Below, one piece after another: positions 1,005-62,566 of a stretch of DNA of 64,000 nt. Under the pieces are notes generated by a model. It saw only the letters and a program-made list of their open reading frames with translations. It had not been told where the DNA came from and searched no databases. Numbering within the stretch: the first letter of the stretch is position 1; each line of letters begins with the position of its first letter. The translations under genes were made by a program, and so were the position numbers. The stretch is from Podarcis muralis (lineage: Eukaryota), in the NCBI RefSeq assembly GCF_964188315.1, contig NC_135656.1:116622001-116686000 (forward strand), given 5' to 3'.

Positions 1005-1748
1005 CTCCTCTTCCTGGTCCTCGCCCTCTCGCTGCCTCAGCAGGAACTCCTCCGCCAGGGCCACCGCCTGCCCGCAGGTCTCCGGGCCGCTTCCCTTCAC
1101 CCAGCCCTGCATCTCCATGGGCAGGACGGCCAGGAACTGCTCCAGGATCACCAGCTCCAGGATCTGCTCCTTGCTGCTCCTCTCCGGCTTCAGCCACTGG
1201 TGGCAGAAATCCCGCAGCTGCCCGCAAACCTCCCGGGGCCCCTCGGCCTCCTCGTAGCAGAAGAGACGGAAGCGCTGGCGCTGCCACTCCCTGCAGCTGG
1301 CCTCCCCGCGCAAGATGGCCGCCTTCATCTTCCCGTAACTCTCTCGGGCGTTGGGGCCGCCCAAGCCCTCCTCGGCTGCTTCTCCCAGCCGGGTGGCCCA
1401 CTGGTTGGCCTCACCGGCCCCCTCAAAGTGGGCCAGGAAGGCCTTGATGTCCCCCCAGGGCATGGCGGGCTCTGTTGGCTGCGAGCAAGGGGCCTGCTTC
1501 CCCCCGGGGGACTCCAGCCACTCGGACCCCTGGCTCTGGAGCAGGCCCTCCTCTGCCTCCTCTTTAACCCGGGGGATCGTTATCCTCTTCATAACTCTCC
1601 TGACGCTCCTGGGATGAAGGATGCCGTGAGGTGCTTTCCCGCGTCTTCCAGATCCCTCAACTTGTTCAGGGCCCATGAGGTCCTCCTCATCCATTTGGTC
1701 TTCATCCAGAGCAGCCTGGCCTCCCAGAATCCTTTGCTGGTCGGCCAT
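1005..1748 (-). CDS. ZF1: SCAN-domain coding exon of a ZSCAN/ZKSCAN-like zinc-finger gene (downstream exons lie beyond the left edge)
   Basis: ATG at 1748. SCAN motif [61 protein letters not shown]...ALAEEFL. Phase-0 donor GAG|GTGA at 1005/1004. Acceptor ttttctaaacAG at 1894-1893 opens the exon at 1892. Confidence 0.9.
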
Positions 1749-2741: not shown

Positions 2742-4241
2742 TACTCTATTTATTATCTTCATCACCATGATCCTACACATTGTTGAAGGGAAACTCCCCA
2801 CCGGGGTAGAAATCATATATTGAACAGATGGAAAGCTCTTTAATCTGAGTAGGCTGAAAGCAAAGAGGAAGATTACCGTAACTTTCATCATAGAGCTTCA
2901 GTATGCTGGTGACAACGTAGTGTGCGCACACTCAGAGGATGACCTCTAAACCAGTATCTTCGCAGAAGCTTACAGAAAGCCTGGCCTATCGCTCAAAATC
3001 CAAAAAAACCAAAGTGCTGCACCAACAAGCAGAAAACAACCCCTCTGCAATGCCACAAATCCAACTTAATGGTGTAACGTTGGAAAGTGTCAATCACTTT
3101 TCCTACCTGGGCAGTTATCTTTCCACTGGGGCTGACATCGATGCCAAAATCTGGCATTGCCTGAGCTCTGCGAGCGCAGCTTTCTCCCAATTGAAACATA
3201 GAGTGTTTAAAGACCAGGACATTCACAGGGAAACCGAAATGCTAAGCTATTGTACTACCAACCTTACTGTACGCTTGTGAAACATGGACCACTTATAAAC
3301 GCCATCTCCAACGCCTTGAAAGATTCTATCTCTGAAAAATTTTACACATCACTTGGAATGACAGGCGAACTAATGCCAGTGTACTGGAAGAAGCAAAGAT
3401 CACCAGTGTCAAAGCAACGATACTTCAACATCAGCTTCGTAGGACTATTCATGTTGTGCGGATGCCTGATTATTGTCTTCCAACTACTCTATTCCCAGCT
3501 TAAGAATGGAAAGCATAATGCTGGTGGCAAAAACGAAAGAGGTTTAAAGACACTCTCAGGGAGAATCTTTTAAAATGTAGTATAAAGGTAAAGGTAAAGG
3601 GACCCCTGACCATTAGGTCCAGTCGTGACCAACTCTGGGGTTGCGGCGCTCAACTCGCTTTACTGGCCGAGGGAGCCGGCGTACAGCTTCCGGGTCATGT
3701 GGCCAGCATGACTAAGCCGCTTCTGGCGAACCAGAGCAGTGCACGGAAACGCCGTTTACCTTCCCGCCAGAGTGGTACCTATTTATCTATTTGCACTTTG
3801 ATGTGCTTTCGAACTGCTAGGTTGGCAGGAGAAGGGACCGAGCAATGGGAGCTCACCCCATCATGGGGATTCGAACCACTCAGCAAGTCCTAGGCACTGT
3901 GGTTTAACCCACAGCACCACCCGCATCCTTAAAATGTAGTATAAACACCAACAACTGGGAAACACTGGCCTGCGAGCGCTCCAATTGGAGAACAGCTTTT
4001 ACCAAAGGTGTCATGGGCTTTGAAGATGCTCAAACTCAGGACGCAAGGGAGAAACGTGCTAAGAGGAAGGCACGCTTGGCAAACCCTCACCATGATCAAC
4101 TCCTGCCGAGAAACCAATGTCCCCACTGTGGAAGGACGTGTGGATCCAGAACTGGCCTCCACAGTCACTTACAGTCTCACTGTTAAGACTGTGTTCATGG
4201 AAGACAATCTTACTTAGCTACGAGTGATCGCCAAAGAAGAA
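2742..4241 (+). mobile_element. RTE-clade LINE (non-Bov-B), decayed 3' portion, interrupted by a Sauria SINE
   Basis: RT remnants TLFIIFITMILH...LFNLSRLKAK...ELQYAGD (YADD) and KTKVLHQ...LESVNHFSYLGS. Ends in a gaagaaga tail. Confidence 0.8.
3587..3928 (-). mobile_element. Sauria SINE with 17-bp TSD
   Basis: (ACCTTT)n tail and typical body. TTAAAATGTAGTATAAA at 3570-3586 and 3929-3945. Confidence 0.9.
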
Positions 4242-4467
4242 GACTCCCAAGCACGTAGTGGAAGCAGGAAGCAGATGAAATAACCAAGCAGAAGCTGATT
4301 GTGGCAGGTGAAATTTGCACAGTATAGGTGTTTGTTTGCTTTTTAAATGACTGGAGGGTGGGTGGGTGCGGGTGCCTGGTCCCTGCAGCCCATTACCTCC
4401 CTCTCCTGATGTCTCTCCCCCCCCCCCCCGTCCTTTCTGGTCTTGCACCCACCCCTTTAAAACTCAC

Positions 4468-4650
4468 CGCCCTTCCAGAGATGCAGCAGAAATATATCCA
4501 GAGCAAAACTGTTTTGCAGATCAGTCAAACAACGCAGTGCAAACCGAGGCTGGGGATTCAAAAAACAGGTTCCCTCCTGGAGAAGGTGGAGCAGGAAGGA
4601 GACTGGAGGGTTTCCCATTCTCCACCCCCCAGCCACACACACACACACAG
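4468..4650 (-). other. Putative non-coding first exon of ZF1
   Basis: Consensus donor GCG|GTGAGT on the minus strand at 4467-4462. The 5' boundary is a guess. Confidence 0.4.
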
Positions 4651-5166
4651 AGACACACTTTTAAGAAAGGAAAACCCACAGATTTCCGGCCCTTCTCTAG
4701 CAACTACAGCCTCTGTTGACTTAACTCTTTGCAGCATCCCAAGAGCTCAGTTTAAAAGGATCAAGGAGCTTGGCAGGGCCGGGAGAAGGAGGAGCTCTCT
4801 CTGCCAGCCAGAGTTTTATTTATTTGTTGCATTTATATCCCTGAATTTGTTGCATTTAGACTCTTTCCAGCCACACGCCCTGTCATAGACTGGCCTGCTG
4901 CTTTACAGTGCTGGGCTTTAATTGTTGCTGTCACGGGCATAGCCAGGGGGGGCAATAAAAATCAATAGCAAGCTCAGGTTCTGCCCCCCCCAACAAAAGG
5001 CAATGCAGGAATTAAATAAACACTAGTTCTTTTAAATCGCCAATGAACAAGCTTAGCAATGCAATTTTAGGACCACCCAGTACCATCCGGCCTGTTCTTA
5101 GTTCATCATGAACTTCCGAATAAGACCGAACCTTCTCGCAGAGGCAGTGTGGGGTAGTGGTTAGAG

Positions 5167-5374: not shown

Positions 5375-5797
5375 CTGTATGCCCCTTTGAGCTCCTTAGA
5401 GAAGAAGGTGGGGGGAATGCAATTTGTCATTGTTATGCTTTTACATGTGTTGGAAACCGCCCAGAGTTACTGGGCCAACCCAGCCAAATGGGTGGGGTAT
5501 AAGCAAAATTATAAATAAAATTATAATATAAAATTATAAATATCTAGCAGTGCGCATCAAACCCAGCCCTTCCTGAGTTATGGGGGTTTCCACCATCCTC
5601 TCCCCTAAGGGATCTTGCGTCTTTCAAGTGGCAGGCAGAAATTCAGAGGGCAAAGCTCTCCCCGGGCATGGAAATGCAATGCTGTGCCTGGCTGCACCTG
5701 TTAGATGTCTGCCTGCCACGCTGCTGCATAAAGGCCAGGGCTTTGTTTGTTGTTTAAGGAGTACCACCTGGCCTTGTGAGAGTGATGGTGGCTTGTC

Positions 5798-5800
<3 letters not shown>

Positions 5801-5831
<31 letters not shown>
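5801..5831. repeat. (GA)n microsatellite
   Basis: Direct reading. Confidence 0.9.
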
Positions 5832-5834
<3 letters not shown>

Positions 5835-5869
5835 TCTGCAATAAGGGTTAAAAAAATAAAGTGTCACCC

Positions 5870-6054
5870 AGGCAGTTCTCTGCTTCCTAGAGAGGCCAGG
5901 AAAGGCAGGAGGCTGCAAGGGAAGATCATCTTTCCTCTTCCCTTCAATGCCCTGGCGAGGAATCCTTTCCTGTGTTTTGCCACAGAGGAAAACCAGAGCC
6001 TTGGCAGGACATTGCCCAGAGGGTTTGCAGGGCAGCAGCTGCTGCAAGGAGCTG
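5870..6054 (+). other. Putative non-coding first exon of ZF2
   Basis: Donor CTG|GTGAGT at 6055-6060. Sequence resembles the putative first exons of ZF4 and ZF5. The start is approximate. Confidence 0.45.
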
Positions 6055-7319
6055 GTGAGTTGGAGGAAGGAGAATGGGGGGATCTTTGTGGGGAGGGGGG
6101 AGGAGGTTTCACTGGGGTTGGAGAGGAAAAGAAACAGCTGGAGGGAAAGGGATTACTTTTGCTCTGTGCAAGGAGAGAGGGGCATTCTCCCCAAATGTGC
6201 CCGGAAAGAGAAAATTGTATTTACTGGTGCATTGGTGCTGCGCTGTTCCGTTTGAGCTGCTTTCGTTGGCATAATAGGGTGTGTGCAGTTCTGTCATAAG
6301 GCAGAAAGGCAAATGGTCAAATATTTTGGCAGGCGGACAAAACCAATCTGATCAATAAAAAAAAAATGTTTCTATGCCACTAAAAAATATCAAAGTGGTT
6401 TACAACAAATGAGTACACACAAACACACACTAAAGAAACATGTAAAAATGAAAACCCAAGATCATCCGCTAACTATTTTTAGTAGCCTGCATAACTCTGG
6501 CAGCGTGGGAAAGTTCGCAGCAGACTTTTAAAGATTAAAGAGAAGGCATCCATTGGGTCTCTACTGAGCCTTCCATAAGATTGGGCCAATCACTAATTTT
6601 TATTATTAGCTACATTTGCATACCATAGATCTCAGGGAGGTTCACAGCATTGAAATACAAGATAAAAACACAAATGCATAATAAAAACAAGAACAAAGCA
6701 AACTAATAACCCCCTGCCCTCCTAATTTACACTTCCTGGAAATAATATGTGACCAAAAACACCGGGATCCTTCAAAATGTGCACTTATCCGAAATTTGCA
6801 GTGCCATTCCCCAGTCGAAAGGATGTGTATGAAACTGAATATATTTGTGAGACATAGAATATAGCAAAAATGTGTCCCTTTTGTGAAAGTCGCTTGCCAA
6901 AAATGTACATATTAGGCAAAAATACATAGAAAGAGGTTTATTTTAGGTAAAATGGGCACTAACAAAGTTTCATAAGGAACGTTTTTTTAAAAAAGGAAAT
7001 TGCCAAAGGAATCCCTTTCCGGCACGACAATGGACGCCAAAATATTGTCATGCTTTCTCATCAGGCAAAAAACAAAGAGGTGCGAACCTTGGAAATGTGA
7101 AGAGGGTGCAGCGCATGCTGCCTCGCATCTTGAAACATGAGTGGCAGTGGCCTGAACCCGTGAAAAAGGTGGCAAAATTGCAGTGAGAAACACCACCAGG
7201 TTGAGGGGGATGCAAACAGATTTCTTTGGGAATCAAACAACACGGAAACGAGTGCTAAACTTGTGCCATATGCCATTGCATTGCAGCTCAAATATTATGC
7301 ACAAAATAACAGGGAAATG

Positions 7320-7673
7320 TGGCATGCGGGTGGCGCTCTGTTAAACCACAGAGCCTAGGACTTGCCGATCAGAAGGTTGGCGGTTCGAATCCCCGTGACG
7401 GGGTGAGCTCCCGTTGCTCGATCCCTGCTCCTGTCAACCTAGCAGTTCGAAAGCACATCAGAGTGCAAGTAGATAAATAGGTAACGCTCTGGCGGGAAGG
7501 TAAACGGCATTTCCGTGTGCTGCTCTAGTTCGTTAGAAGCGGCTTAGTCATGCTGGCCACATGACCCGGAAGCTGTACGCCGGCTCCCTCGGCCAATAAA
7601 GCGAAATGAGTGCCGCAACCCCAGAGTCGGCCACGACTGGACCTAATGGTCAGGGGTCTCTTTACCTTTACCT
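7320..7673 (+). mobile_element. Sauria SINE with 13-bp TSD
   Basis: tRNA-like head and acctttacctt tail. TAACAGGGAAATG at 7307-7319 and 7674-7686. Confidence 0.9.
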
Positions 7674-7940
7674 TAACAGGGAAATGGAATAAACTGCAGC
7701 GTTCAGCCGAAAGCAGTCTGCTCCAAAAGTAACAGCAGTTTAACAGCTTTTTCTCCTTCTCTCGGTTATCTTCTTTCAGGGAGAAGGCCCAGTCGCCAGT
7801 CGAAAAGGCCCCCAACTTTTCTTTAGGTACCAGTTTGGCAAAAAGAGACTCCGATTCTCATGTTTGAGAACATGTTTCCCTCGGATGTGTGCTAAGCCCT
7901 GCGAGTTTGAGAGCCACGGCTGAGGGAAGGCCAAGACGAA

Positions 7941-8723
7941 ATGGCCGCTGAGGAAGGAAGCTCCTCACCATCCCTGAGCCTGCAGTTCCGGGTTGCGCTC
8001 GGACAGCACGGCGGGATAAAAACAGAGGCCCAGGACCCTGCTGACGCCGACGCTCACGATATCCAGATGGTGTGCGTTGGCGAGCCTCATGGGTGGACTG
8101 CCTCGACCCATGTCAAGCCGGAACTGGAGGAGGTGCATTGGGAAACTCGAGAAAACGAGGTGTTCTTGAAGGCGAGGCCATCCCCTCGCTCAGGGTGGGG
8201 AAGCCTGCCGCTGTGTCAGGAGGCCCTGCCTTGGGACGGGGTCAAAGTGTTCCCCGCCTCCTTCGAGGGAGCGCTCACGACGTGCAAATGGCTGGCCAGA
8301 GAGTGGGGGTCTCTACAGAGGACACCCGCCTCCGAAATGGAAGGGCAGCAAGCGACTAGCACGCCAAACGGTGCCAGAGCGAGGCGGGGCAGCAGGAAAG
8401 GGAAGGCCGCTGTTCTTCTGAGCGGTGCGGTCGGGGCAGAGGCCCAGCGCCAGCAGTTCAGGCGTTTCTGCTACCAAGAGGCCGAGGGTCTGCACAACGC
8501 CTACGGCCAACTCCGGAGCCTGTGCCATCGGTGGCTGAAGCCGGAGAAGCACTCGAAGGAGCAGATCCTGGAGCTGGTGATCTTGGAACAGTTCCTGGCT
8601 GTCCTGCCCCCGGAGATGCAGAGCTGGGTCAGGGAACGGGAGCCTGAGACCTGCGCCCACGTGATCGCCCTGGCTGAGGATTTCCTGCTAAGGCAACAAG
8701 AGGCAGAACAATTGGGGCAGGAG
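7941..8723 (+). CDS. ZF2 coding exon 1: N-terminal region plus SCAN domain
   Basis: Acceptor ttctttcAG at 7778-7779, ATG at 7941. [21 protein letters not shown]...[22 protein letters not shown]...ALAEDFL. Phase-0 donor GAG|GTGACT at 8724. Confidence 0.9.
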
Positions 8724-8937
8724 GTGACTGGGGCGGTGGCCGGCCTGAAGTTTGGGAGGTTCACATGGGAATTTGCTAGATTAGGTGGGGGGCGAGTGCC
8801 TGGATCTGTTGATAAACCAGAGTTTAACTTGAGTGGGTGGGGCAAAGGGGGGGGAGGGAGTGAACTGGAAGTGTGGTATAGTGTGTAGAGCAGTGTGGTG
8901 TAGTGGTTGGACTCTGGCCACATCCACAGTACACACT

Positions 8938-9067
8938 GTAGAATCCTAGAATGGTAGAGTTTGAAGGGACCACGTGGGTCATCTGTTTCCACCCCCTGCA
9001 ATGCAGGAATCTTTTGCCCAACCTGGGGCTCGAACCCATGACCCGGAGGTTAAAAGTCTCATGCTGT
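8938..9067 (-). mobile_element. tRNA-Lys-derived SINE with CR1-like 3' tail
   Basis: Reverse complement agcatgagacttttaacctccgggtcatgggttcgagcccc... (tRNA-Lys-like), then a CR1-type end ccttcaaactctaccattctaggattcta. Confidence 0.7.
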
Positions 9068-9310
9068 ACATTCAAAGCATATTCACCACACTTTTCACAG
9101 TCATGGCTTCCCCCCAAAGATTCCTGGGAGCTGTAGTTTTGCCCCTCACAGAGGTCTAATGCCATCCAAGCTCTGCTTAAAAACCTCCAATAATAAAGTC
9201 CTTCCTGATGTTTAGTCGGAATCTCCTTTCTTTTAACTTGAATTCATTGGTTCATTGTGGTGCCCAGAAACGGACATAGTGTTCCAGGTGTGCTCTGACA
9301 AAGGCAGAAT

Positions 9311-9697
9311 GTTGTTGTTGTTTAGTGGTTTAGTCGTGTCCGACTATTTGTGACCCCATGGACCAGAGCACGCCAGGCACTCCTGTCTTCCACTGCCTCC
9401 CGCAGAGGTGGCCAAAATATTGGAGCCTCGGCTTCAGGATCTGTCCTTCCAGTGAGCACTCAGGGCCGATTTCCTTCAGAATGGAGAGGTTTGATCTTCT
9501 TGCAGTCCATGGGACTCTCAAGAGTCTCCTCCAGCACCATAAGTCAAAAGCATCCATTCTTCGGCGCTCAGCCTTCTTTATGGTCCAGCTCTCACTTCCA
9601 TACATCACTACTGGGAAAACCATAGCTTTGACTATACGGGCCTTTGTCGGCAAGGTGATGTCTCTGCTTTTTAAGATGCTGTCTAGGTTTGTCACTG
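9311..9697 (-). mobile_element. Bov-B (RTE) LINE 3' fragment, 11-bp TSD, inserted in a CR1 remnant
   Basis: SRDITLPTKARIVKAMVFPVVMYGSESWTIKKAERRRMDAFDLWCWRRLLRVPW is the Bov-B ORF C-terminus. AAAGGCAGAAT at 9300-9310 and 9698-9708. Confidence 0.9.
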
Positions 9698-9946
9698 AAA
9701 GGCAGAATAGAGCCATCCTATTACTTCCCTTGATCTGGACACTAGACTTCTGTTGGTGCAGCCTAGAATAGCATGAGCTTTTTTTGCTGCTCCGTCACAA
9801 ACATTCCATTGCAATTTAACTTTATGAAATGACACATTTCTTAACAAAAATCAGGTGAAATTTCTCCCACACTGGTCTCCATGCCGCCTCTAGTGGATCC
9901 TTTCCCTGTCCCAGCTCTGACAGAAACCTTTCCGCTCTTCTTACAG

Positions 9947-10073
9947 GAGCTGGGACCCTTTGTGGAGGTGATGGTGAATTCTCCCGAGGGAGAGCAAGTT
10001 CCATCGGATGCTTGGCAGAGTCCACTCTTCAAGGAGATCAAGCAGAAGGGCGACAGAGATGCAGAAACAATCG
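9947..10073 (+). CDS. ZF2 coding exon 2: 127-bp degenerate KRAB-A-derived exon
   Basis: ttacAG|GAG...TCG|GTATGG, phase 0 to 1. ELGPFVEVMVNSPEGEQVPSDAWQSPLFKEIKQKGDRDAETIG aligns without gaps to KRAB-A. Confidence 0.8.
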
Positions 10074-10130
10074 GTATGGAGTCACTTAGCTAGCAGGAGT
10101 GGCAGGAGGGAGGGGGAGGAGCTAATAATA

Positions 10131-10439
10131 TACCTGAAGGAGCGTCTCCACCCCCATCGTTCAGCCCAGACACTGAGGTCCAGCACCGAGGGCCTTCTGG
10201 CGGTTCCCTCACTGTGAGAAGTGAGGTTACAGGGAACCAGGCAGAGGGCCTGCTTGATAGTGGCTCCTGCCCTGTGGAACACCCTCCCACCAGATGTCAA
10301 GGAAATAAACAACTATCTGATTTTAGAAGACATCTGAAGGCAGCCCTGTTTAGGGAAATTTTTAATATTTGATGTTTTATCGTCTTTTTTATATTCTGTT
10401 GGGAGCTGAGGGAAACCCAACCAGATGGGAAGGGTATAA

Positions 10440-10490
<51 letters not shown>
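10131..10490 (+). mobile_element. L2 LINE 3' end with (TTA)n tail
   Basis: Highly similar to 356-1000. Confidence 0.85.
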
Positions 10491-10492
<2 letters not shown>

Positions 10493-10519
10493 ACTTGTAA
10501 GCGAAAAGTAGGCCACACC

Positions 10520-11060
10520 ACTAATTCAAAGCACTTGTCATGGCTTCCCCCAAGGAATCCCGGGAACTGTAGTATGTTAAAGGTGCCAAAAGTTGTTAAG
10601 CGACACACACACACACACACACACACGGCTTTATTCCCCTCACAGAGCTACAGTTTAACAGTCAATCAATCCCTCTTCCACGGGAACTCTGGGAACTGTA
10701 GCTCTGAGAGGGGAATAGGATGCCTCCTAACAGCTCTCAGTGCCCTTAACCACCTACATTTCCCAGGATTCTTTGGGGGAGGCCATTCAGTTGTACCTTG
10801 GTTCTCGATCGGAATCCGTTCCAGAAGTCTGTTCAACTTCTGAAAACGTTCAAAAACCAAGGCACAACTTCCGATTGGCTGCAGGAGCTTCCTGCACTCA
10901 GTTGGAAGCCATGTTGGATGTTTGGCTTCCAAAAAACATTCGCAAACTAGAACACTCACTTCTGGGTTTGTGGTGTTCGGGAGCCAAAATGTTTGAGTCA
11001 CAAGGCGTTCCAGAACCAAGGTACAACTGTACTGTTTAATGTGGTATCATACTACTTTGA
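10520..11060. repeat. Old foldback (palindromic) interspersed element, split by a MITE at 10788-11029
   Basis: Inverted arms catggcttcccccaaggaatcccgggaactgtagt / ctacatttcccaggattctttgggggaggccat and an inner pair cccctcacagagctaca / tgtagctctgagagggg. Related copies near 14800, 23830, 27470, 38000, 39860, 42860 and 54000. Confidence 0.65.
10788..11029. mobile_element. Tc1/mariner-pogo MITE family B
   Basis: Perfect 14-bp TIRs cagttgtaccttgg / ccaaggtacaactg, 3' TA. Confidence 0.85.
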
Positions 11061-11065
11061 ATGTA

Positions 11066-11307
11066 CAGTGGTATGTCGGGTTACAGACGCTTCAGGTTAC
11101 AGATGCTTCAGGTTACAGATTCCGCTAACCCAGAAATAGTACCTCAGGTTAAGAACTTTGCTTCAGGAGGAGAACAGAAATCGTCCAGCGACAGCACAGT
11201 GGCAGCGGGAAGCCCCATTAGCTAAAGTGGTGCTTCAGGTTAAGAACAGTTTCAGGTTAAGAACGGACCTCCAGAATGAATTAAGTACTTAACCTGAGGT
11301 ACCACTG
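11066..11307. mobile_element. MITE family A
   Basis: TA|cagtggta...taccactg|TA with internal gcttcaggttaca repeats. Confidence 0.9.
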
Positions 11308-11456
11308 TATAAGGCGGGGGAAAGTGACATTAGATGGGAAACCGCTTCAGTTTTTAAATTATTCTTAAGTGGCATCTAAATCTTATTAAATAAAACTAAA
11401 AATGATTTGGCCGGGGTGGGTGGGTGTCGATGACTCAACTGTGTCTTTTCCTTCAG

Positions 11457-12301
11457 ACAGCCGTACGACGTCCCAGGAAGAGGAAGAGGTCGGGCAGCAA
11501 AGAGGTTCGGAGTTAGCGGAAGCACGCAGGATGTTCCTGGGCAAATCCGCCGGCCGCCTCACCCTGAGGTGCGAGAGCTTTGAGGAAGCTTGCGGATCGA
11601 AGCGGCAGCAGGAGTGGCTTCCCGCGGTGACATGGGAGGAGCCGTCGCACCGGTCGGAAGCCGACGGGCCTGTTCCCGAGGCGGCGCTCCACGACGTGGC
11701 GGTCAAGTACCTTTGCCCCGAGTGCGGCCGGAACTTCCAGCACAAATCGACCTTAATCCGCCACCAGAAGATGCACACGGGCGAGAAGCCCCACGTCTGC
11801 CTGGAGTGCGGGAAGAGCTTCCGCCGCAGGGACAAACTGATCCGCCACCAGAGGATCCACACGGGGCAGAAACCCCACGAGTGCACCGAGTGCGGGAAAA
11901 GCTTCCGCGAGAGGGGGAAGCTCACCAACCACCAGAGGATCCATACCGGCGAGAAGCCCTACGCCTGCCCGGCCTGCAAGAAGACCTACCGCTGGAAGGA
12001 GGAGTTTGTGAAGCACCTGAGGATCCACACGGGCGAGAGGCCCTACGGGTGCGTGCTCTGCGGCAAGGCCTTCATCAGCAAGGCCCACCTGGTCTCCCAC
12101 CACCGCAGCCACACCGGAGAGAAGCCGTACGAGTGCGCCGAGTGCCGCCGGCGGTTCTGCAGCAAGCAAAGCCTCGCCAAGCACCAACGGGTCCACGCGG
12201 AAGAGAACGCCTACGAGTGCCAGGACTGCGGGAAGGTCTTCCGCTATGTGTCGAACTTCGCCAAACACCAGAGACTCCACACGAGCGACAGGATCCTCTA
12301 G
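11457..12301 (+). CDS. ZF2 coding exon 3: 7 C2H2 zinc fingers
   Basis: Acceptor ttccttcAG at 11455-11456, phase 1. Seven CxxC...HxxxH repeats with TGEKP-type linkers. The three exons total 1755 nt, in frame. Confidence 0.92.
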
Positions 12302-12388
12302 GGAGGAATAATCATAATAATTTAATTTTTGTACCCTGCCCATCTGACCAGGTTGCTTCAGCCACTCTGGGCAGCTTCCCACAGAATA

Positions 12389-22396: not shown

Positions 22397-23197
22397 ATGG
22401 CAGCCAAGCCGAGGGACGGATTGGTGCTGGGTCTCCAGCCCGAGGCTGGGCCTCAACAGGGAGTGAAAATGGAGCAACCGGACCTAGCAGCCCTTGACCC
22501 AGGAGTGGGGAACGGCCCGCACGTCATGCAGGCCAGGAATACCAGGGAATTCTGGGAGAGAAACATGTCGGGCCACGTCAAGCAGGAGCCACAGAAGGGG
22601 CTGCAGCAGCCATGGGAGGCCCAGCTGCAGGAGTTCCTCAGAGCGATGGAGTCTTCCCACTCCGAGGGGAGAAACCAGCACCAGCGGACATTGGCGTTGC
22701 GGGATGAGGCCCACCCCGTCCTGCCTCCTTCGGTGGGAATGGATGGCGCCAGGCCGCATCTGAGGAGAGAGATGGCAACCCCTCTCCTGCCAGGGTCTTG
22801 CAGAGAAGCCCAGCAGCCAGCTAACAGCCTCTTGGCCAAAGAGACAAGAGAGTCCGGGAAAGTCAAGGAAGAGGTCCTGAAGGAGGAGGAGAACGGCGTG
22901 GCCACTGGCATGGATGCTGAGCGCCAGCGCTTCCGGCAGTTCGGCTACCAGGAGGCCGAGGGGCCTCGAGAGACTTGCAGCCGCCTCTGGGATCTTTGCC
23001 ACTGGTGGCTGAAGCCAGAGAGGCACACCAAGGAGCAGATTTTGGAGCTGGTGATCCTGGAGCAGTTCCTGGCTGTCCTGCCCCCGGAGATGCAGAGCTG
23101 GGTCAGGAAAGGCGGGCCAGAGAGCTGCTCGCGGGCGGTGGCCTTGGCGGAAGACTTCCTGCTAAGGCAGCAGCCCGAGGAGCAGCGGCCCAAGCAG
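22397..23197 (+). CDS. ZF3 coding exon 1: N-terminal region plus SCAN domain
   Basis: Acceptor ctcctcAG at 22257-22258, aaaATGG at 22397. [56 protein letters not shown]. Donor CAG|GTGAGT at 23198. Confidence 0.9.
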
Positions 23198-24559: not shown

Positions 24560-24686
24560 GTGCCGGGGGTGTCCAAGGAGGGGTCTGCCAAGATCCCTGA
24601 AGTGGAGGCGTCTCCCTTGGGTGCCTGGCCAAGGCCTCTCTTCAGAGAGATCAAACAGGAAGGCGACAGAGAAGCAGCCTTGCTGG
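24560..24686 (+). CDS. ZF3 coding exon 2: 127-bp degenerate KRAB-A-derived exon
   Basis: ctgtttcAG|GTG...CTGG|GTAAGG, phase 0 to 1. VPGVSKEGSAKIPEVEASPLGAWPRPLFREIKQEGDREAALLG. Confidence 0.8.
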
Positions 24687-26092: not shown

Positions 26093-27115
<1,023 letters not shown>

Positions 27116-36726: not shown

Positions 36727-36982
36727 TTAAACTGCTTTGAGATTTTTCTTAAAAATATAAAGCGGTATAGAAATTAAAAATAAATAAAAATGTTTCTAGT
36801 CTCTCCTAACCTTTTTAATGGTGCTTACTCCTTCCCTTAGGGAGAAGCTAACTGGGAACAAATTTGAGCCTCTTTGGCCTGTGGTGTGTGTTGGTTTGAG
36901 GTGCCCAACCGCCCTTCCAAAAGTCAACATTGGACTTATGGTCACCCCGGTCGCAGATGCCCGGCTTGGCCTGAGACACAAA

Positions 36983-37465
36983 ATGGCCACTGAGCAAGGT
37001 AGCGCCAACACCCCAAGCTTCCAGTTGCCGGCGGATCCGAAGGTGGGGACGAAAATGGCGGAAGAGGAGCAGGCCAGCTACCTTGCCGGCAGGGCTGCGG
37101 GTCCTTGCATTCTTCAAGCCGGGAGCATGTGGGGCCTTGAGAGGAGAAGCGGGGAAGATACCCCAAATGGGACCAGCAGCGTCTCCAACACTTGGCATCA
37201 ATATATCCGGCCATTTAGCCACCACGAAGCCGAGTGGCCGCGGCAAGTTTGCCGGCAGCTCTGGGAGCTGTGCTGCCGGTGGCTGAAGCCGGAGAGACAC
37301 GGCAAGGAGCAGATTTTGGACCTGGTGGCCCTGGAGGAGTTCCTGAGGGCTTTGCCCCCAGAAATGCAGAGCTGGGTCAGGGCGATTGGGCCAGAGGGTG
37401 GCTCGCGAGCGGCGGCTGACAATTTCTTCCCCAGGGAAAGAAGCAGTGAGGAGCAAGAAGAAGAG
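36983..37465 (+). CDS. ZF4 coding exon 1: diverged SCAN domain
   Basis: Acceptor cttcccttAG at 36839-36840, aaaATGG at 36983. [42 protein letters not shown]. Donor GAG|GTAAGA at 37466. Confidence 0.85.
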
Positions 37466-37667
37466 GTAAGAACGGTTTGCTGCAAGCAATCTGAAGGGGT
37501 TGAGAAGGTAGGGGCTTGCTGACCACTGTTGCGCCGTTCCTTTTTTTCTCGATTTTTGGGCGGTGGGTGCCGTTCCTTAAGTAGCCAAAACAGCACCACC
37601 CACAAGGGGGAAGCAACAGCAGGCTTAGGGAACCCCAGTCTATCTGCAGAAGTACAAAAAGGCTTTA

Positions 37668-37907
37668 CAGTGGTACCTCGGGTTACAGACGCTTCAGGTT
37701 ACAGACTTCAGGTTACAGACTCCGTTAACCCAGAAATAGTACCTCGGGTTAAGAACTTTGCTTCAGGATGAGAACAGAAATCGTGCTCTGGTGGCACAGC
37801 AGCAGCGGGAGGCCCCATTAGCTAAAGTGGTGCTTCAGGTTAAGAACAGTTTCAGGTTAAGAACGGACCTCCGGAATGAATTAAGTTCTTAACTCCAGGT
37901 ACCACTG
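37668..37907. mobile_element. MITE family A
   Basis: TA-flanked TIRs. Confidence 0.9.
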
Positions 37908-38097
37908 TATAAGGGGGTCTGGAAAACTTTGAAGGGGGAAAATCTCAAAATATTCCCATAGAGGAATGAGCATTCTTAGATGACATTTGAGCCCTACCTC
38001 TGAAGCACTGTGACACCACTTTAGACGGTCATGAATTCACCCAAAGAATCATGGAAAGTGGGTTGTTGTTTTTTAGGATGCCCAGAATTGTTAGGGG

Positions 38098-38810
38098 GCG
38101 ATTCTGGGCATCCTCAAAAAACCACTTCCCAGGGATGGTAGGATGAAAGGAGTCTGTCAACTTGCCAAGGAACTGATAAGGTTCATTACTGAGTTATCTG
38201 CAGTTTGACAGACAGCTATTCTTCCCAGGGTGAGAGGAAAAATAGCGAAAACAGGTTATTTATTGGGACAGAGTGACTTTTGCAGCTGTTGTTAAAGTTG
38301 CAAAACAACGACGTATGGGACAGAGTGAGGGAGAAATTTCTGGAGCAACAATGGAATATCAGCTTCACCCAAGGCATGATAGAGAACAGCAACAACCGGG
38401 GGGGAAATAGACATAATATCTTACAAGGACAGGAAGAAATAACATGGACAGAATAATTTCCACACACAGGAAGAACAAGGTTATAGTTTGAGCGCCTCAC
38501 TTGTAGTTTTATAAATCATTTAATGTGTCAACACGAATAGAAGTTATTAATACTGCAGTTGTTGTATAATGGGATTATTATTATTATGACCGGAATGTAA
38601 TTGAAATTAATAAGATTTTGGAACGCAGAAATAAAGAAACTCATAAACCATCAATTCTAGCATGGGGGGGGCACTTTATCTAAATTATATAATTCAGTAT
38701 TTGAATGATTGGTATTGGTAATTGTTTTGTAAACGGGCATTATTATAACGAGGTTGTTATTGGATTGCAATTGAAAACTAATAAAAAGTATTATTTAAAA
38801 AATAAGAAAA
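38098..38810 (+). mobile_element. L1-like retro-insertion with A-rich tail and 14-bp TSD
   Basis: AGAATTGTTAGGGG at 38084-38097 and 38811-38824. AATAAA and A-rich 3' end. Confidence 0.65.
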
Positions 38811-38939
38811 AGAATTGTTAGGGGACCCCTATCTCCATCACAGAGCTACAATTCCCTGAGCGGTTTAACATGCAACCCCTCTTCACAGGGAACTCTGGGA
38901 ACTGTAGCTCTGCCTGCTTTCTAGCGGATCTTTGCACTA

Positions 38940-39408
38940 ATAATAATGATAATGATAATGATAATTTTATTTTATTTATACCCGCCCACTTGGCTGGGCT
39001 TCCCCAGCCACTCTGGGTGGCTTCCAACAAGATATTAAAATACAAGAATGCATCAAACATTAAAAGCTTCCCTAAACAGGGCTGCCTTCAGATGTCTTCT
39101 AAAAGTCTGGTAGTTGTTGTTCTCTTTGACATCTGGTGGGAGGGCGTTCCACAGGGAGGGCGCCACTACCGAGAAGGCCCTCTGTCTGGTTCCCTGTAAC
39201 TTCACTTCTGGCAGTGAGGGAACCACTAGAAAGTCCTCGGCGCTGGACCTCAGTGTCCAGGCTGAACGATGGGGGTTGGAGACGCTCCTTGAGGTATACT
39301 GGACTGAAGCCGTCTAGGCCTTTCAAGGTCAGCACCAACACTTTGAATTGTGCGCGGAAACATACTGGGAGCCAATGTAGGTCTTTCAAGACTGGTGTGC
39401 ATGAGGAC
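38940..39408 (-). mobile_element. L2 LINE 3' end
   Basis: KDLHWLPVCFRAQFKVLVLTLK. (TCA/TTA)n tail. Confidence 0.85.
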
Positions 39409-39544
39409 TAGAGCCTTAAACAAGCGCGGAAGCTGCATTCTTTGCTCAGCTCCACATCCCATGCTTTTTCCTACGCTCCCTGCAAACAGTGGCACAGCCC
39501 TCGCTGGGTAGGAACTGTGAGCAAATGAGAAATCACATTGCTGA

Positions 39545-39775
<231 letters not shown>

Positions 39776-40449
39776 TGAATTTCAACACCTTCCCTGCTGG
39801 GGGCAGGAGATTCATAATCCACCTGACCCCACAGATGACACTTTCATGTTTAAAGCTCTATGATAGCACTTTAAACAGTCATGGCTGCCCCCAAAGAATT
39901 CTGGGAGCTGTAGTTTATTAAGGGTGCCAAGAGTTATTAGGAGGCTCCTACTCCCTTCGCAGAGGTAAAAGTCCCATAATTCCCCAGGAAGAGGGCTCTG
40001 GGAATTGTTACTTTGTCTGCTGTCAGCTCTCAGCACCCTTAACCACAGTCCCCAGGATGTTTTGGGTGCAGAAGCTGTGGCTGCTGAAGGGGTATAAGAA
40101 TTCTTTCAATGTTTAGGGGAGAGCGGGCGGGGTCAGCTCCACGTTTGAGGGCGGACATGGCAAAGTGGGGAAGAGTCGCAGCTCTGTGGCTGAGCACAAA
40201 GTCTCAGTTTCAATCCCTGGCACCTCCAGGCAGGATTAGGAAAGGCTCCTTGCCTGATTCCCCAGATAGCTACTGCCAGTCAGTGAAGACAATACTGAGA
40301 TAGATGGACCCATGCATCAGGTAGCTTTCCTATGCCTAGCCACTTCTCTGGTGTCTGAAGAGGGCAGTAAGGTTGAGTGGAGCCCTTTTCGAGAAGTCGC
40401 AAAAGTAAAAAGGTTGTGCTGATGGTTTTTCATTTTGTTTCCTCTGAAG

Positions 40450-40569
40450 GACTTTGGCTTCTCAAACCCGAATTCGTCTCCTGGCTGGATGAAGAGGAAG
40501 AAGAAAGTGAGACATTTGTCCAGGGAGCTGCTGAAAGAGAGGAGAGATCAAGAGGAAGGAGTTCTTTGG
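40450..40569 (+). CDS. ZF4 coding exon 3: KRAB-B-like box
   Basis: ttttgtttcctctgaAG| then GLWLLKPEFVSWLDEEEE, phase 1 to 1. Donor either G|GTATTT (40570) or A|GTGAGA (40507); both keep the frame. Confidence 0.65.
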
Positions 40570-40660
40570 GTATTTATTTATATTCACTCTTATTTGATTT
40601 ACATGCTGCCCTTTAATAGGTTCCCAGAGTAGCTTACAGAAAGTCCAAACCACACGAAAA

Positions 40661-40695
<35 letters not shown>

Positions 40696-40813
40696 ATGCT
40701 AAGCTATCAGCAGAATTAAAACAAAACACCAGGCAGCATTTAAAAAAAACCAGACAGAAGATTTTAAAAACCAACAAAAATCTTATGTCACAATTCTCTG
40801 CTTCTTCTGGCAG

Positions 40814-50764: not shown

Positions 50765-52785
50765 TTACAAGGTTTCTCGTGCTAGGTGGATTTTCTTGTG
50801 CCTGAAGAGGTGCGAGGGGTCGCTGAAGTTCCGGCCACATTCGGGACACACGAACGGCCTCTCCCCCGTGTGGATTCTCCGGTGGTTCACAAGCTGCGAG
50901 AGCTGACGGAAGCACTTCCCACACTCCAAACACGTGTACGGTTTCTCCCCTGTGTGGATTCTCTGGTGTTTCACAAGCGGGGAGCGCTCTCGGAAGCACT
51001 TCCCGCACTCGGAGCATTTGTACGGCTTCTCTCCTGTGTGGATTCTCTGGTGACTGATAAGGGCTGACCTCCTTCGGAAGCACTTCCCGCATTCCGAGCA
51101 CCGACACGGCCTGTCGCTCGTGTGGGTCCTTTCGTGCACGAGTAGCTCATTCCCTGTGCAGAAGCTCTTCCCACAGGCCAGGCATTTGTACGGCCTGTCT
51201 CGTGTGTGGGTCCTCTTGTGCCTGATCAGGTGCGAGGGGTCTCCGAAGCTTTTCCCGCAGTCGGGGCAGCTAAAGGGTTTCTCCCCCGTGTGGGTTCTCT
51301 CATGGTTCATGAGCTGCGAGTGCTGGCGGAAGTCCTTCCCGCAAATGGAGCATTTGAAAGGTTTCTCTCCCGTGTGGATTCTCTGATGTTTAATGAGGAC
51401 TGATCTGCTGCTAAAGCTTTGGCCACATTCCGGGCACTTATATGGCTTCTCTCCCCTGTGGATTCTTTCATGGGCAAGGAGACCTGAATTGTGGTTGAAG
51501 CTTTTCCCACACTCTGAGCACTGATACGGTTTCTCTCCTGTGTGGATTCTCATGTGAGTCGTAAGATAGGCACTGGTGCTAAAGTTCTTCCCGCAAACAG
51601 AGCACTCACAAGGTTTCTCTCCAGTATGGGTTCTTTTGTGTCTGTTGAGGTGAGACGGGTCGCTGAAGGCCCTCCCACAATCCGAACACGCATATGGCCT
51701 CTCCCCTGTGTGGATTCTCTGGTGGCTCCCGAGCTGAGAGTGCTGCCGGAAGCATTTTCCGCACTCCGCGCACTTGTAGGGCTTCTCTCCCGTGTGGATT
51801 CTCTGGTGTTTCACAAGTTGCGACTGCTGCCGGAAGCACTTCCCGCACTCGGGGCATTTGTAAGGTTTCTCGCCCGTGTGGATGCCCTGGTGGTTCACGA
51901 GCTGGGAATGCTGCCGGAAGCACTTCCCGCACTCGGAGCATTCGTAGGGCTTCTCTCCTGTGTGGATTCTCTGATGTTTTGCGAGCTGCGAATTGTATTG
52001 GAAGCACTTCTCGCACTCAGAGCATTTGTGCGGCTTCTCCCCTGTATGCATCCTCTGGTGGCTAATGAGGACCGACATCCTGGCGAAGCTTTGCCCACAG
52101 GCGGCGCACTGGCACGGTTTCTCGCTCGTGTGGATTCTCTCATGCATGAGAAGCTCGTTGCCTGTGCAGAAACTCTTCCCACACACCAAGCACTTGTACG
52201 GCCTCTCTCTCATGTGGGTCCTCTTGTGCCTGATGAGGTGCGAGGGGTCACCAAAGCTTTTCCCGCAGCTGGGGCAGCCGTACGGTTTCTCTCCGGTGTG
52301 GATTCTCTCGTGGTTAACAAGGTGAGAGTGTTGGCGGAAGCCCTTCCCACAAACGGAGCATGTGAAAGGCTTCTCTCCCGTGTGGATCCTCTGATGTTTA
52401 ATGAGGACCGATTTATTGTTAAAGTTTTGGCCACAATCTGGGCATTTGAACAGAGCCCTGTTGGCTTGGATTATTCCATGTGCCAGAAGATCAGACGTCT
52501 CCCGCAAGACTTTTACACACCCAAGGGGTCCTTTTCCGTGCTGATCCTCGGGGAGACCCTGCTGGAATATTCTGTCCTCCAGTTCCTCGTACCTGCCCTG
52601 GTGATCAATCAAGTTGTCCTCCTCTTCTGCTAGGCAGTTTCCCTGCTGGCTCTCAGAGGCTTCATCTCCCAGATTGGGGCTCCAAGATAAATTCTGTTCC
52701 GCTCCTCTCAGTAGCATCGCATGTGGTTCCATTTCCGCAGGATTTCCAGCCTGATTTGGCTCATTCCCACACACCCACTCATCAC
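50765..52785 (-). CDS. ZF5 last coding exon: 20 C2H2 zinc fingers
   Basis: Acceptor tttttattccggcAG at 52787-52786, phase 1. Twenty fingers with TGEKP-type linkers. Confidence 0.93.
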
Positions 52786-53843: not shown

Positions 53844-53973
53844 CTGAGAAGGTGGCAACTCCATCATCAGCCTCTTGCTTGATATCCTGGAAGAGCAAGC
53901 CCTGCCAAGTGTCTTGAAGAGCGTCCTCTGTCTCGGGGAGATTCATTTTTTCTTGCTTCTGCGGACTCAGAAC
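53844..53973 (-). CDS. ZF5 degenerate KRAB-A-derived exon (130 bp; ATG at 53946) with GC donor
   Basis: ctctgttgctAG|GTT...TCAG|GCAAGG. VLSPQKQEKMNLPETEDALQDTWQGLLFQDIKQEADDGVATFSG aligns with the ZF2/ZF3 exon 2 peptides. Confidence 0.72.

Positions 53974-62347: not shown

Positions 62348-62566
<219 letters not shown>

What the first reader, a model, noticed from the sequence alone, without database searches (positions are those of the whole stretch)
9947..10073. A family of KRAB-A-derived exons that replaced the TRIM28-recruiting helix with an IKQE motif
Seen: ZF2 (9947-10073), ZF3 (24560-24686) and ZF5 (53973-53844) carry a phase 0-to-1 exon of 127, 127 and 130 bp in the KRAB-A position. 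The ZF2 peptide aligns without gaps to the canonical ZF4 KRAB-A (identical F5, E7, V8, V10, E16, D21, A22, Q24, L27, E30, G43). However, W17 is lost and [10 protein letters not shown] has become LFKEIKQKGD / LFREIKQEGD / LFQDIKQEAD, with a shared new W at position 23. Established: the conserved acidic and MLE residues of KRAB-A are needed for TRIM28/KAP1 binding, and psi-K-x-E is the SUMO acceptor consensus. Inference: this is a conserved neofunctionalised squamate post-KRAB module, possibly a SUMO-dependent or activating domain, rather than neutral decay. The three copies share derived residues and keep frame and splice sites.
Basis: partly seen in the sequence, partly recalled or inferred. 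Interest (0 to 1): 0.75.

Follow-up and report, generated by a model that had tools for sequence, protein, structure and literature searches.

The report
Lizard KRAB-like exon after SCAN domain
The three small exons are real, old, conserved copies of the KRAB-A repressor exon found in SCAN zinc-finger genes across lizards and snakes. They have lost most residues needed to recruit TRIM28, and in relatives they sit beside a normal KRAB-A exon rather than replacing it.

Summary
The exons at 9947-10073, 24560-24686 (both 127 nt) and 53844-53973 (130 nt, minus strand) are phase 0-to-1. They lie between a SCAN exon and a zinc-finger exon and share P13, E14, E16, W23, L27, F28, I31, K32, Q33 and D36. 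RNA contigs and reads join 10073 to 11457.

KRAB-A ancestry is well supported:
- Exon size and phase match the window's two true KRAB-A exons.
- Offset 0 is the only positive register in all six comparisons.
- A 32-sequence profile aligns to KRAB-A end to end (hhalign 96.5%, E 9e-10).
- One relative passes Pfam's KRAB cut-off.

The family runs across Squamata, from geckos to lacertids and snakes, and evolves more slowly than its flanks.

Corrections:
- In Elgaria, Gekko and Varanus the module exon and a canonical KRAB-A exon coexist in one gene. It is therefore a second KRAB-A-like exon, not KRAB-A mutated in place.
- ZF2, the flagged copy, reads IKQK, which is not a SUMO consensus.
- ZF2 residue 43 is D, not G.
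- Inclusion of the ZF3 and ZF5 exons is unverified.

Loss of TRIM28 binding and SUMO acceptor function are inferences only. I class it as a new variant of a known kind (variant KRAB), of moderate interest.

The parts
9947..10073 (+). ZF2 KRAB-A-like module exon (127 nt, phase 0-to-1). The motif is LFKEIKQKGD, which is not a psi-K-x-E site.
   Evidence: AG/GT, single open frame. (joint 10073|11457 in RNA contigs X3 and X4 and in 2 raw RNA reads). (76.5 bits to the family HMM).
7941..8723 (+). ZF2 first coding exon: ATG, N-terminal region with psi-K-x-E motifs, SCAN box. It ends in phase 0 at GAG|gtgact.
   Evidence: Transcript contigs cover 7900-8724.
11457..12301 (+). ZF2 last exon: linker plus 7 C2H2 fingers and the stop codon. 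It enters in phase 1, and the split codon is GAC = D.
24560..24686 (+). ZF3 KRAB-A-like module exon (127 nt). The motif is LFREIKQEGD, a psi-K-x-E site.
   Evidence: (71.7 bits). Splicing is inferred from the splice sites and the family only.
22397..23197 (+). ZF3 first coding exon with the SCAN box. It ends AAGCAG|gtgagt in phase 0.
26265..27115 (+). ZF3 last exon: linker plus 7 fingers. The acceptor is one of 26262, 26265 or 26268 (tandem AGs).
   Evidence: This is an inferred model.
53844..53973 (-). ZF5 KRAB-A-like module exon (130 nt, GC donor). The motif is LFQDIKQEAD, a psi-K-x-E site.
   Evidence: (60.0 bits). The only orthologous gene model found (P0001, Podarcis muralis) omits it, so inclusion is unverified.
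50765..52785 (-). ZF5 last exon: linker homologous to that of ZF3, plus 20 fingers. No SCAN exon for this gene lies in the window.
   Evidence: P0001 is 97% identical over it.
39572..39698 (+). Comparator: the canonical KRAB-A exon of ZF4 (127 nt, phase 0-to-1). It is spliced directly to the ZF4 SCAN exon, with no module exon between them.
   Evidence: Pfam KRAB 80.4 bits.. (P. lilfordi orthologue model P0076). (the family HMM hits it in exact register, E 5e-6).
36983..37465 (+). Comparator: the ZF4 SCAN exon. The donor is GAG|gtaaga at 37465. The model's start is uncertain; the orthologue aligns from 36842.
62414..62540 (+). Comparator: a second canonical KRAB-A exon (127 nt) of a gene that runs off the window.
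   Evidence: 72.6 bits.. (the family HMM hits it in exact register, E 6e-3).

Best explanation
The exon at 9947-10073 and its two siblings belong to a squamate-wide family of KRAB-A-like exons that lie directly after the SCAN exon of SCAN zinc-finger genes.

Origin. The family descends from a KRAB-A exon: same 127-nt length, same 0-to-1 phase, same residue register. It arose either by tandem exon duplication or by joining of two genes, before geckos split from other squamates. Many squamate SCAN-KRAB genes still have both exons, in the order SCAN, module, small exon, canonical KRAB-A, KRAB-B, fingers. In ZF2, ZF3 and ZF5 the small exon and the canonical KRAB-A/B exons are absent. The module is then the only KRAB-related sequence and splices straight to the finger exon.

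Function (inferred). The module kept E16, E34 and the aromatic and aliphatic positions 28 and 31. It lost W17, L20, M32 and N35, and mostly V8. These are among the residues that the KRAB-KAP1 structure paper (PMC9753469) lists as required for silencing or KAP1 contact. It therefore probably does not recruit TRIM28. In the KRAB-less subfamily the ancestral V-M-L-E has become I-K-Q-E followed by x-D-x-D, a psi-K-x-E SUMO acceptor consensus with acidic residues after it, in a segment predicted to have no fixed fold. The most likely role is a short regulatory motif that makes the factor's repressor or activator output depend on SUMO rather than on TRIM28.

ZF2 itself has IKQK, so it has probably lost that site while keeping the conserved N-terminal half.

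Shown: existence, splicing of ZF2, KRAB-A homology, coexistence with KRAB-A in relatives, conservation.
Inferred: no TRIM28 binding, SUMO acceptor function.
For: Homology with KRAB-A:
- offset 0 is the only positive register in 6 of 6 pairs (p at most 0.00075).
- an HMM of 38 module sequences finds the window's two true KRAB-A exons as the next best hits, in exact register (E 5e-6 and 6e-3), and nothing else below E 0.8.
- hhalign of module against KRAB-A gives 96.5%, E 8.8e-10, columns 2-43 on 2-43 without gaps.
- P0017's module scores 21.8 bits on Pfam KRAB (cut-off 20.4). Three others score 12-15 bits in the same register.

Separate exon coexisting with KRAB-A:
- Elgaria: module 4007-4133 and KRAB-A 12035-12161, both 127 nt.
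- Gekko: 3695-3821 and 12215-12341, both 127 nt.
- Varanus: 3774-3894 (121 nt) and 4714-4840 (127 nt).
- In Elgaria and Gekko no finger-exon match lies between the two exons.
- 62 of the 66 SCAN-to-KRAB gaps measure 53-104 aa (59 of them 58-82), nearly all in squamates, with graded module-like sequence.

Spread. All 20 true profile hits are squamates of Gekkota, Scincoidea, Lacertoidea, Anguimorpha or Iguania. A snake copy was seen.

Expression: splice joint in RNA; a 586-aa transcript ORF reading SCAN-module-fingers.

Constraint:
- module dN 0.18 and omega 0.28, against SCAN 0.16, N-terminal region 0.42 and linker 0.49.
- mean pairwise identity is 0.40 for the module, 0.245 for the next 43 aa and 0.48 for the SCAN end.
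- E16 in 31 of 32, E34 in 30, K32 in 29, psi-K-x-E in 28.

TRIM28 residues: (PMC9753469) set.

Precedent for variant KRAB factors that do not associate with TRIM28 and depend on a SUMO acceptor lysine: (PMC6923878, ZNF746 K189R).

No fixed fold predicted.
Against: - The three window peptides give no Pfam KRAB hit even at E 10.
- The flagged copy, ZF2, lacks the SUMO consensus. Its nearest relative lacks both W23 and K32. The C-terminal half of that lineage therefore looks relaxed.
- ZF3 and ZF5 are no more alike in the module (39% over 31 aa) than in the following linker (37% over 81 aa).
- Inclusion of the ZF5 exon is unverified, and the only orthologue model skips it.
- ZF4 in the same window joins SCAN directly to a canonical KRAB-A with no module. 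The order of events (duplication, fusion, loss) is therefore not settled.
- The near-exclusive pairing of psi-K-x-E with absence of KRAB-A rests on only 1-2 independent contrasts.
- No experiment bears on SUMO or TRIM28.
- psi-K-x-E is a short motif, and it also occurs several times in the N-terminal regions of these proteins.
Confidence: 0.6

Rival explanations
1. In-place divergence. The module is the original KRAB-A exon of SCAN-KRAB genes and drifted or neofunctionalised where it stood. The canonical KRAB-A seen downstream in Elgaria-, Gekko- and Varanus-type genes was acquired later, for example by read-through fusion with the 5' exon, KRAB-A and KRAB-B of a neighbouring KRAB zinc-finger gene.
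For: - In the window the module occupies exactly the slot that KRAB-A occupies in ZF4: SCAN exon, 127-nt phase 0-to-1 exon, then downstream exons.
- The small phase-restoring exon between module and KRAB-A could be a former first coding exon of a KRAB gene.
Against: - The order SCAN, module, small exon, KRAB-A is shared by geckos, snakes, anguimorphs, skink relatives, iguanians and lacertids, with a constant 58-82 aa gap. It is therefore at least as old as the KRAB-less form.
- No finger-exon match lies between the two exons in Elgaria or Gekko.
- Either way, the two exons coexist, so 'replaced' does not describe the family.
Confidence: 0.2
2. Relic without a function of its own. The exon is kept mainly because it preserves reading frame and spacing between SCAN and fingers. 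Its sequence is slowly decaying, at least in ZF2.
For: - ZF2 has IKQK. Its relative has LEQE and S23.
- AlphaFold sees no structure.
- The ZF3/ZF5 module is no better conserved than the linker.
- An Ensembl model omits the ZF5 exon.
Against: - 40% mean identity across roughly crown-squamate divergence, against 24.5% for the adjacent 43 aa.
- dN equal to that of SCAN and less than half that of the flanks.
- Near-invariant E14, E16, K32 and E34.
Confidence: 0.12
3. It is still a working, if weak, TRIM28-recruiting KRAB-A.
For: - E16 and E34, which correspond to ZNF93 E17 and E35, are kept, as are F/Y28 and I/V31.
- One member passes Pfam's KRAB cut-off.
Against: - W17, L20, M32 (now a charged K) and N35 are lost family-wide, and V8 mostly.
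- ZF2 also has K at column 34. The comparable E35R change cut KAP1 affinity 26-fold.
Confidence: 0.05
4. Chance resemblance: an unrelated linker exon that happens to look like KRAB-A.
For: No Pfam hit for the three window peptides.
Against: plus identical exon length and phase in six loci.
Confidence: 0.03

Closest known systems
KRAB-A box (Pfam PF01352) of KRAB zinc-finger proteins
   Same: 127-nt phase 0-to-1 exon ending ...L-G|gt. Residue-for-residue register. Shared F5, E7, F12, E16, D21, Q24, R25, L27, aromatic 28, R29, E30, aliphatic 31, E34 and S41-L42-G43. hhalign E 8.8e-10.
   Different: No Pfam hit for the window copies. W17, L20, M32, L33 and N35 are replaced. New conserved residues are K6, P13, P19-S20, W23, P26, K32-Q33, D36 and D38. 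In many squamate genes it lies upstream of a canonical KRAB-A.
Variant KRAB domains (vKRAB, Helleboid et al. 2019, as cited in PMC9753469), for example those of SCAN-KRAB and DUF3669-KRAB proteins
   Same: Diverged KRAB homologues that lack KAP1-contact residues, are found in old subfamilies with an extra N-terminal domain, and are thought to act without TRIM28.
   Different: vKRABs are the single KRAB of their protein and are still recognised by the KRAB profile. This module is a second KRAB-A-like exon, was found only in squamates here, and carries a psi-K-x-E site at the former MLE.
DUF3669-KRAB zinc-finger proteins (ZNF746, ZNF777; PMC6923878)
   Same: An extra conserved segment N-terminal to a KRAB. 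N-terminal segments do not stably associate with TRIM28. A SUMO acceptor lysine (ZNF746 K189) is needed for repression in reporter assays.
   Different: No sequence relation to DUF3669 (no Pfam hit). In ZNF746 the SUMO site lies C-terminal to the KRAB, not inside a KRAB-derived exon.
SCAN-only versus SCAN-KRAB zinc-finger genes (Emerson and Thomas 2011; PMC3971581; bioRxiv 10.1101/2025.03.03.638093)
   Same: Those papers report the large squamate expansion and the proposed path from SCAN-KRAB to SCAN-only genes.
   Different: The passages I read of those papers do not mention a KRAB-A-like exon between SCAN and KRAB or fingers. 'SCAN-only' lizard genes such as ZF2 and ZF3 in fact retain a KRAB-derived exon that standard KRAB profiles miss.

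Membership tests
KRAB-A box (PF01352) | Score above Pfam's gathering cut-off (20.4 bits) | tested here: not met
   ZF2, ZF3 and ZF5 peptides: no hit at E up to 10. Within the wider family, P0017's module scores 21.8 bits (passes) and three others score 12-15 bits. 3 of 32 members hit at E up to 10.
KRAB-A box (PF01352) | Encoded by its own 127-nt, phase 0-to-1 exon upstream of the finger exon | tested here: met
   127, 127 and 130 nt in the window. 127 nt in Elgaria and Gekko, 121 nt in Varanus. The true KRAB-A exons are 127 nt in all five cases checked.
KRAB-A box (PF01352) | Detectable homology by profile comparison | tested here: met
   hhalign 96.5%, E 8.8e-10, full length and ungapped. 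The family HMM finds both window KRAB-A exons in register.
KRAB-A box (PF01352) | Residues required for KAP1 binding and silencing (ZNF93 D8, V9, I11, F13, E17, W18, L21, Y29, V32, M33, E35, N36) | tested here: not met
   Kept or conservatively changed: D8 (as E), E17, Y29 (as F), V32 (as I), E35. Partly kept: I11, F13. Lost: W18, L21, M33 (now K), N36, and mostly V9.
KRAB-A box (PF01352) | Binds TRIM28/KAP1 and silences a tethered reporter | not testable with these tools
   Needs co-immunoprecipitation or surface plasmon resonance, plus a reporter assay.
Variant KRAB (vKRAB) | KRAB homologue with diverged KAP1-contact residues, in a protein with SCAN or DUF3669 | tested here: met
   A SCAN exon lies directly upstream in ZF2 and ZF3.
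Variant KRAB (vKRAB) | Is the protein's (only) KRAB domain | tested here: inconclusive
   True for ZF2, ZF3 and ZF5. False for Elgaria P0023, Gekko P0018, Varanus P0022 and many others, where a standard KRAB-A follows.
SUMO acceptor consensus (psi-K-x-E, with acidic residues downstream) | Large hydrophobic residue, K, any residue, E/D | tested here: inconclusive
   Met in ZF3 (IKQE), ZF5 (IKQE) and 28 of 32 family members. Not met in ZF2 (IKQK).
SUMO acceptor consensus (psi-K-x-E, with acidic residues downstream) | The lysine is actually SUMO-modified | not testable with these tools
   Needs SUMO proteomics or an in-vitro modification assay with a K-to-R control.
DUF3669 (PF12417) | Match to the Pfam profile | tested here: not met
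   No hit.

The most novel reading that the evidence does not exclude
Squamates evolved a second effector exon from KRAB-A in which two substitutions turned the TRIM28-contact motif V-M-L-E into the SUMO acceptor I-K-Q-E. In a large, ancient subfamily that then lost the canonical KRAB-A/B exons, this module took over as a TRIM28-independent, SUMO-switched repression (or activation) domain. Most lizard 'SCAN-only' zinc-finger genes would then be hidden KRAB-derived regulators.
Probability: 0.25. Interest if true: 0.6.

Novelty: new variant of a known kind. Interest (0 to 1): 0.42.

Why it matters
- Lizard and snake genomes hold hundreds of SCAN zinc-finger genes that are sorted into 'SCAN-KRAB' and 'SCAN-only' by standard KRAB profiles (PMC3971581). 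This result shows that at least one large 'SCAN-only' group still carries a KRAB-A-derived exon that those profiles miss. It also shows that many SCAN-KRAB genes carry two KRAB-A-type exons.
- That changes how the family's effector domains should be annotated.
- It gives a natural series for asking how a TRIM28-recruiting motif can be rewired: canonical KRAB-A, module without lysine, module with IKQE.
- It gives a small, testable candidate for TRIM28-independent control of transposon-binding zinc-finger proteins.
- It is an evolutionary refinement of the variant-KRAB idea, not a new kind of system.

Tried and rejected
- Pfam scan of the three peptides gave nothing. The homology claim had to be tested with exon-anchored scores and profiles instead.
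- Word-indexed protein searches gave one hit each: with the ZF5 linker and with a module region of P0036. The index is too sparse for these fast-evolving segments, so these blanks say nothing.
- Exact look-ups of P0013 and P0001 found no DNA. No Podarcis orthologue DNA was therefore available for ZF5, and no orthologue models of ZF2 or ZF3 were in the fetched set.
- I looked for a module relic in the ZF4 SCAN-to-KRAB-A intron, and for KRAB-A relics in the module-to-finger introns of ZF2, ZF3 and ZF5. None scored below E 0.8.
- AlphaFold on the 32-sequence alignment gave mean pLDDT 66, pTM 0.15 and no secondary structure. This fits a disordered motif but says nothing on fold, so no fold search was run.
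- The contingency table of psi-K-x-E against a downstream KRAB-A (1/40/15/13, Fisher 8e-7) is rejected as evidence of co-evolution. The two protein sets were gathered with biased queries. On the SCAN tree KRAB presence changes only 6 times, and only 1-2 independent pairs exist.
- The one mammalian SCAN-KRAB protein fetched (rhinoceros ZIM2, P0126) shows no module in its 58-aa gap. One protein cannot date the origin.
- The upstream ZF2 junction (8723 to 9947) was not among the listed joints. Some low-depth contigs read through both intron ends, so unspliced RNA or DNA is also present.

Full report
**What is in the window**

The window is a zinc-finger gene cluster of a lacertid lizard.
- Two encoded proteins are 96-97% identical to Podarcis proteins.
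- Pattern scans and tblastn show SCAN exons at about 1005-1700 (minus), 7941-8723, 22397-23197 and 36842-37465 (plus).
- Finger exons lie at 11457-12301, about 26265-27115 and about 40813-42171 (plus), and at 50765-52785 (minus).
- Two canonical KRAB-A exons lie at 39572-39698 and 62414-62540. They score 80 and 73 bits on Pfam KRAB, and each is 127 nt and phase 0-to-1.

**Check of the observation**

The three reported exons exist as described.
- They are 127, 127 and 130 nt, with one open frame each and polypyrimidine/AG acceptors.
- ZF2 and ZF3 have GT donors. ZF5 has a GC donor.
- With the ATG at 7941, the ZF2 model 7941-8723 / 9947-10073 / 11457-12301 is an uninterrupted 584-codon frame.
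- RNA evidence: the joint 10073|11457 (GT..AG) stands in transcript contigs from two studies and in two raw RNA-seq reads.
- The SCAN-to-module joint was not among the listed joints. One contig ends exactly at the predicted donor. A full-length transcript ORF of a ZF2-like relative (586 aa, Logan contig L004) has the junction at the same residue.
ZF2 residue 43 is D, not G. ZF2 reads IKQK, not a psi-K-x-E site. The ZF5 donor is GC, and the only orthologue model found (Podarcis muralis A0A670HQ28) skips that exon.

**Is it KRAB-A-derived? Yes.**

1. With exons anchored at their first codon and no gaps, each of the three peptides scores positively (BLOSUM62 10 to 30) against each of the two canonical KRAB-A exons. 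Every other offset from -12 to +12 is negative. Shuffles give p of at most 0.00075.
2. A profile of the three peptides, searched against 1.84 billion representative proteins, gave 21 hits at E up to 1e-3. Twenty are SCAN or zinc-finger proteins and one is an unrelated repeat protein.
3. An HMM of 38 distinct module sequences, run on all six-frame pieces of the window, finds the three modules. The next best hits are the two true KRAB-A exons in exact register (E 5e-6 and 6e-3), and nothing else scores below E 0.8.
4. hhalign of a 32-sequence module alignment against five squamate KRAB-A boxes gives 96.5% probability and E 8.8e-10, with columns 2-43 on 2-43.
5. One family member (Hemicordylus P0017) passes Pfam's own KRAB cut-off, at 21.8 against 20.4 bits. 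Three others score 12-15 bits in the same register.

Column by column, the module keeps F5, E7, F12, E16, D21, Q24, R25, L27, F/Y28, R29, E30, I/V31, E34 and S-L-G at the end. V-M-L-E at columns 31-34 has become I-K-Q-E.

**It is a separate exon, not KRAB-A changed in place**

Three hits of the profile search carry the module and also a canonical KRAB-A 20-40 residues further on. I fetched their loci and mapped the exons.
- Elgaria: SCAN exon, module 4007-4133 (127 nt), a small exon near 7629-7694, KRAB-A 12035-12161 (127 nt), KRAB-B, then the finger exon. The locus has no assembly gaps.
- Gekko japonicus: module 3695-3821 (127 nt), small exon 9300-9383, KRAB-A 12215-12341 (127 nt).
- Varanus: module 3774-3894 (121 nt), small exon 4417-4521, KRAB-A 4714-4840 (127 nt).
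- No finger-exon match lies between module and KRAB-A in Elgaria or Gekko, so these are single genes and not two fused complete genes.

A further search returned about 120 SCAN and SCAN-KRAB proteins. Nearly all are squamate, including snakes and an amphisbaenian. In 59 of the 66 SCAN-to-KRAB pairs the gap is 58-82 residues. It holds sequence of graded likeness to the module. One example is the gecko form FSEAEGAPSEEGQRAQAQE..., which lacks LFREIKQE.

Within the window, ZF4 joins SCAN directly to a canonical KRAB-A with no module, as in its P. lilfordi orthologue model. Three architectures therefore coexist in squamates. Whether the second copy arose by exon duplication or by gene joining, and which losses followed, is not settled.

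**Conservation**

- All 20 true hits of the first profile search are squamates of Gekkota, Scincoidea, Lacertoidea, Anguimorpha or Iguania. A snake copy appears. The module therefore predates the gecko split.
- No non-squamate protein reached E 1e-3. That profile was built from three lacertid sequences, so the blank is weak evidence.
- ZF2 against the L004 transcript: dN is 0.18 in the module and 0.16 in SCAN, against 0.42 and 0.49 in the flanking N-terminal and linker regions. Omega is about 0.28, and dS is near saturation.
- Across 22 KRAB-less members, mean pairwise identity is 0.40 for the module, 0.245 for the next 43 residues and 0.48 for the SCAN end. The pairs are not independent.
- Near-invariant columns are E14, E16, K32 and E34. 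W23 is present in 22 of 32 members and psi-K-x-E in 28 of 32.
- Against this, the ZF2 lineage has lost the lysine motif (IKQK; LEQE in its relative) and W23 in the relative. ZF3 and ZF5 are no more alike in the module than in the next linker.

**Likely mechanism (inference)**

The KRAB-KAP1 structure paper lists D8, V9, I11, F13, E17, W18, L21, Y29, V32, M33, E35 and N36 (ZNF93 numbering, one more than my columns) as required for silencing or contact.
- The module consensus keeps E17 and E35, and conservative versions of D8, Y29 and V32.
- It has lost W18, L21, M33 (now a charged K) and N36, and mostly V9.
- ZF2 also has K at the E35 position. E35R lowered KAP1 affinity 26-fold.
- TRIM28 recruitment is therefore unlikely.

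I-K-Q-E-x-D-x-D is a textbook SUMO acceptor consensus with acidic residues after it. The segment has no predicted fold. Human DUF3669-KRAB proteins give a precedent: their N-terminal segments with a variant KRAB did not stably associate with TRIM28, and repression by the ZNF746 segment was lost with a SUMO-site K189R mutant.

I therefore favour a SUMO-dependent regulatory motif for the IKQE-bearing copies (ZF3, ZF5). For ZF2 I favour a partly decayed version.

The near-exclusive pairing of IKQE with absence of a canonical KRAB-A is suggestive. It reduces to one or two ancient splits on the SCAN tree and cannot count as evidence of functional replacement.

**Comparison with what is known, and novelty**

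- Variant KRAB domains that no longer bind KAP1 are established (cited in PMC9753469).
- The squamate expansion of SCAN and SCAN-KRAB genes is known (PMC3971581; bioRxiv 10.1101/2025.03.03.638093).
- In the passages I read, neither paper mentions a KRAB-A-like exon between SCAN and KRAB or fingers. I found no paper that does, but the literature search was limited.
- I class this as a new variant of a known kind.

**Verdict**

- Interest is moderate.

Noticed in passing
window 36842-42171 (+): ZF4 is a complete SCAN, KRAB-A, KRAB-B, finger gene. Its KRAB-A exon follows the SCAN exon directly, with no module or small exon. It is 96-97% identical to P. lilfordi 'finger 420-like' (P0076). A KRAB-B-like stretch (LLKPEFVSWLDEEEEE) lies near 40398-40535.
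   Followed up: partly
window 9259-9711, 10129-10466 and 11071-11372: The introns of ZF2 hold highly repeated sequence. Summed contig depth reaches 10^4 to 10^5, and hundreds of raw RNA reads have loose ends at 9405, 10129 and 11309. These are probably interspersed repeats expressed elsewhere in the genome.
   Followed up: no
window 1005-1700 (-): Another SCAN exon lies on the minus strand. Its downstream exons, including any module, would lie before the start of the window.
   Followed up: no
window 50765-53973 (-); P0001: The Ensembl model of the P. muralis orthologue of ZF5 (A0A670HQ28) skips the module exon, extends the finger exon upstream into intron-like sequence, and takes a SCAN exon that is not in this window. 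It looks like a mis-model, or else the SCAN exon lies more than 10 kb upstream.
   Followed up: partly
window 4118-4180 (+): A lone C2H2-like motif (CPHCGRTCGSRTGLHSHLQSH) stands outside any finger array, near ORFs at 4328-4888 and 5580-6299. From memory it resembles the C-terminal motif of LINE ORF2 proteins. I did not test this.
   Followed up: no
P0003 (Pogona vitticeps), residues about 255-750: Five tandem module-like copies about 110-125 residues apart stand in one predicted protein, so the module can also be repeated within a gene or gene model. P0002, P0008 and P0014 carry two copies each.
   Followed up: no
L001-L003; proteins listed: The small exon between module and KRAB-A carries its own conserved motif (G-V/A-E-T-x-A-x-x-P-x-Q) in geckos, snakes and lizards. 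Its origin and role are unknown.
   Followed up: no
window 7941-8200 and 22397-22900 (+): The N-terminal regions of ZF2 and ZF3 contain further psi-K-x-E motifs (IKTE, VKME, VKQE, VKEE). The module's lysine would therefore be one of several candidate SUMO sites per protein.
   Followed up: no
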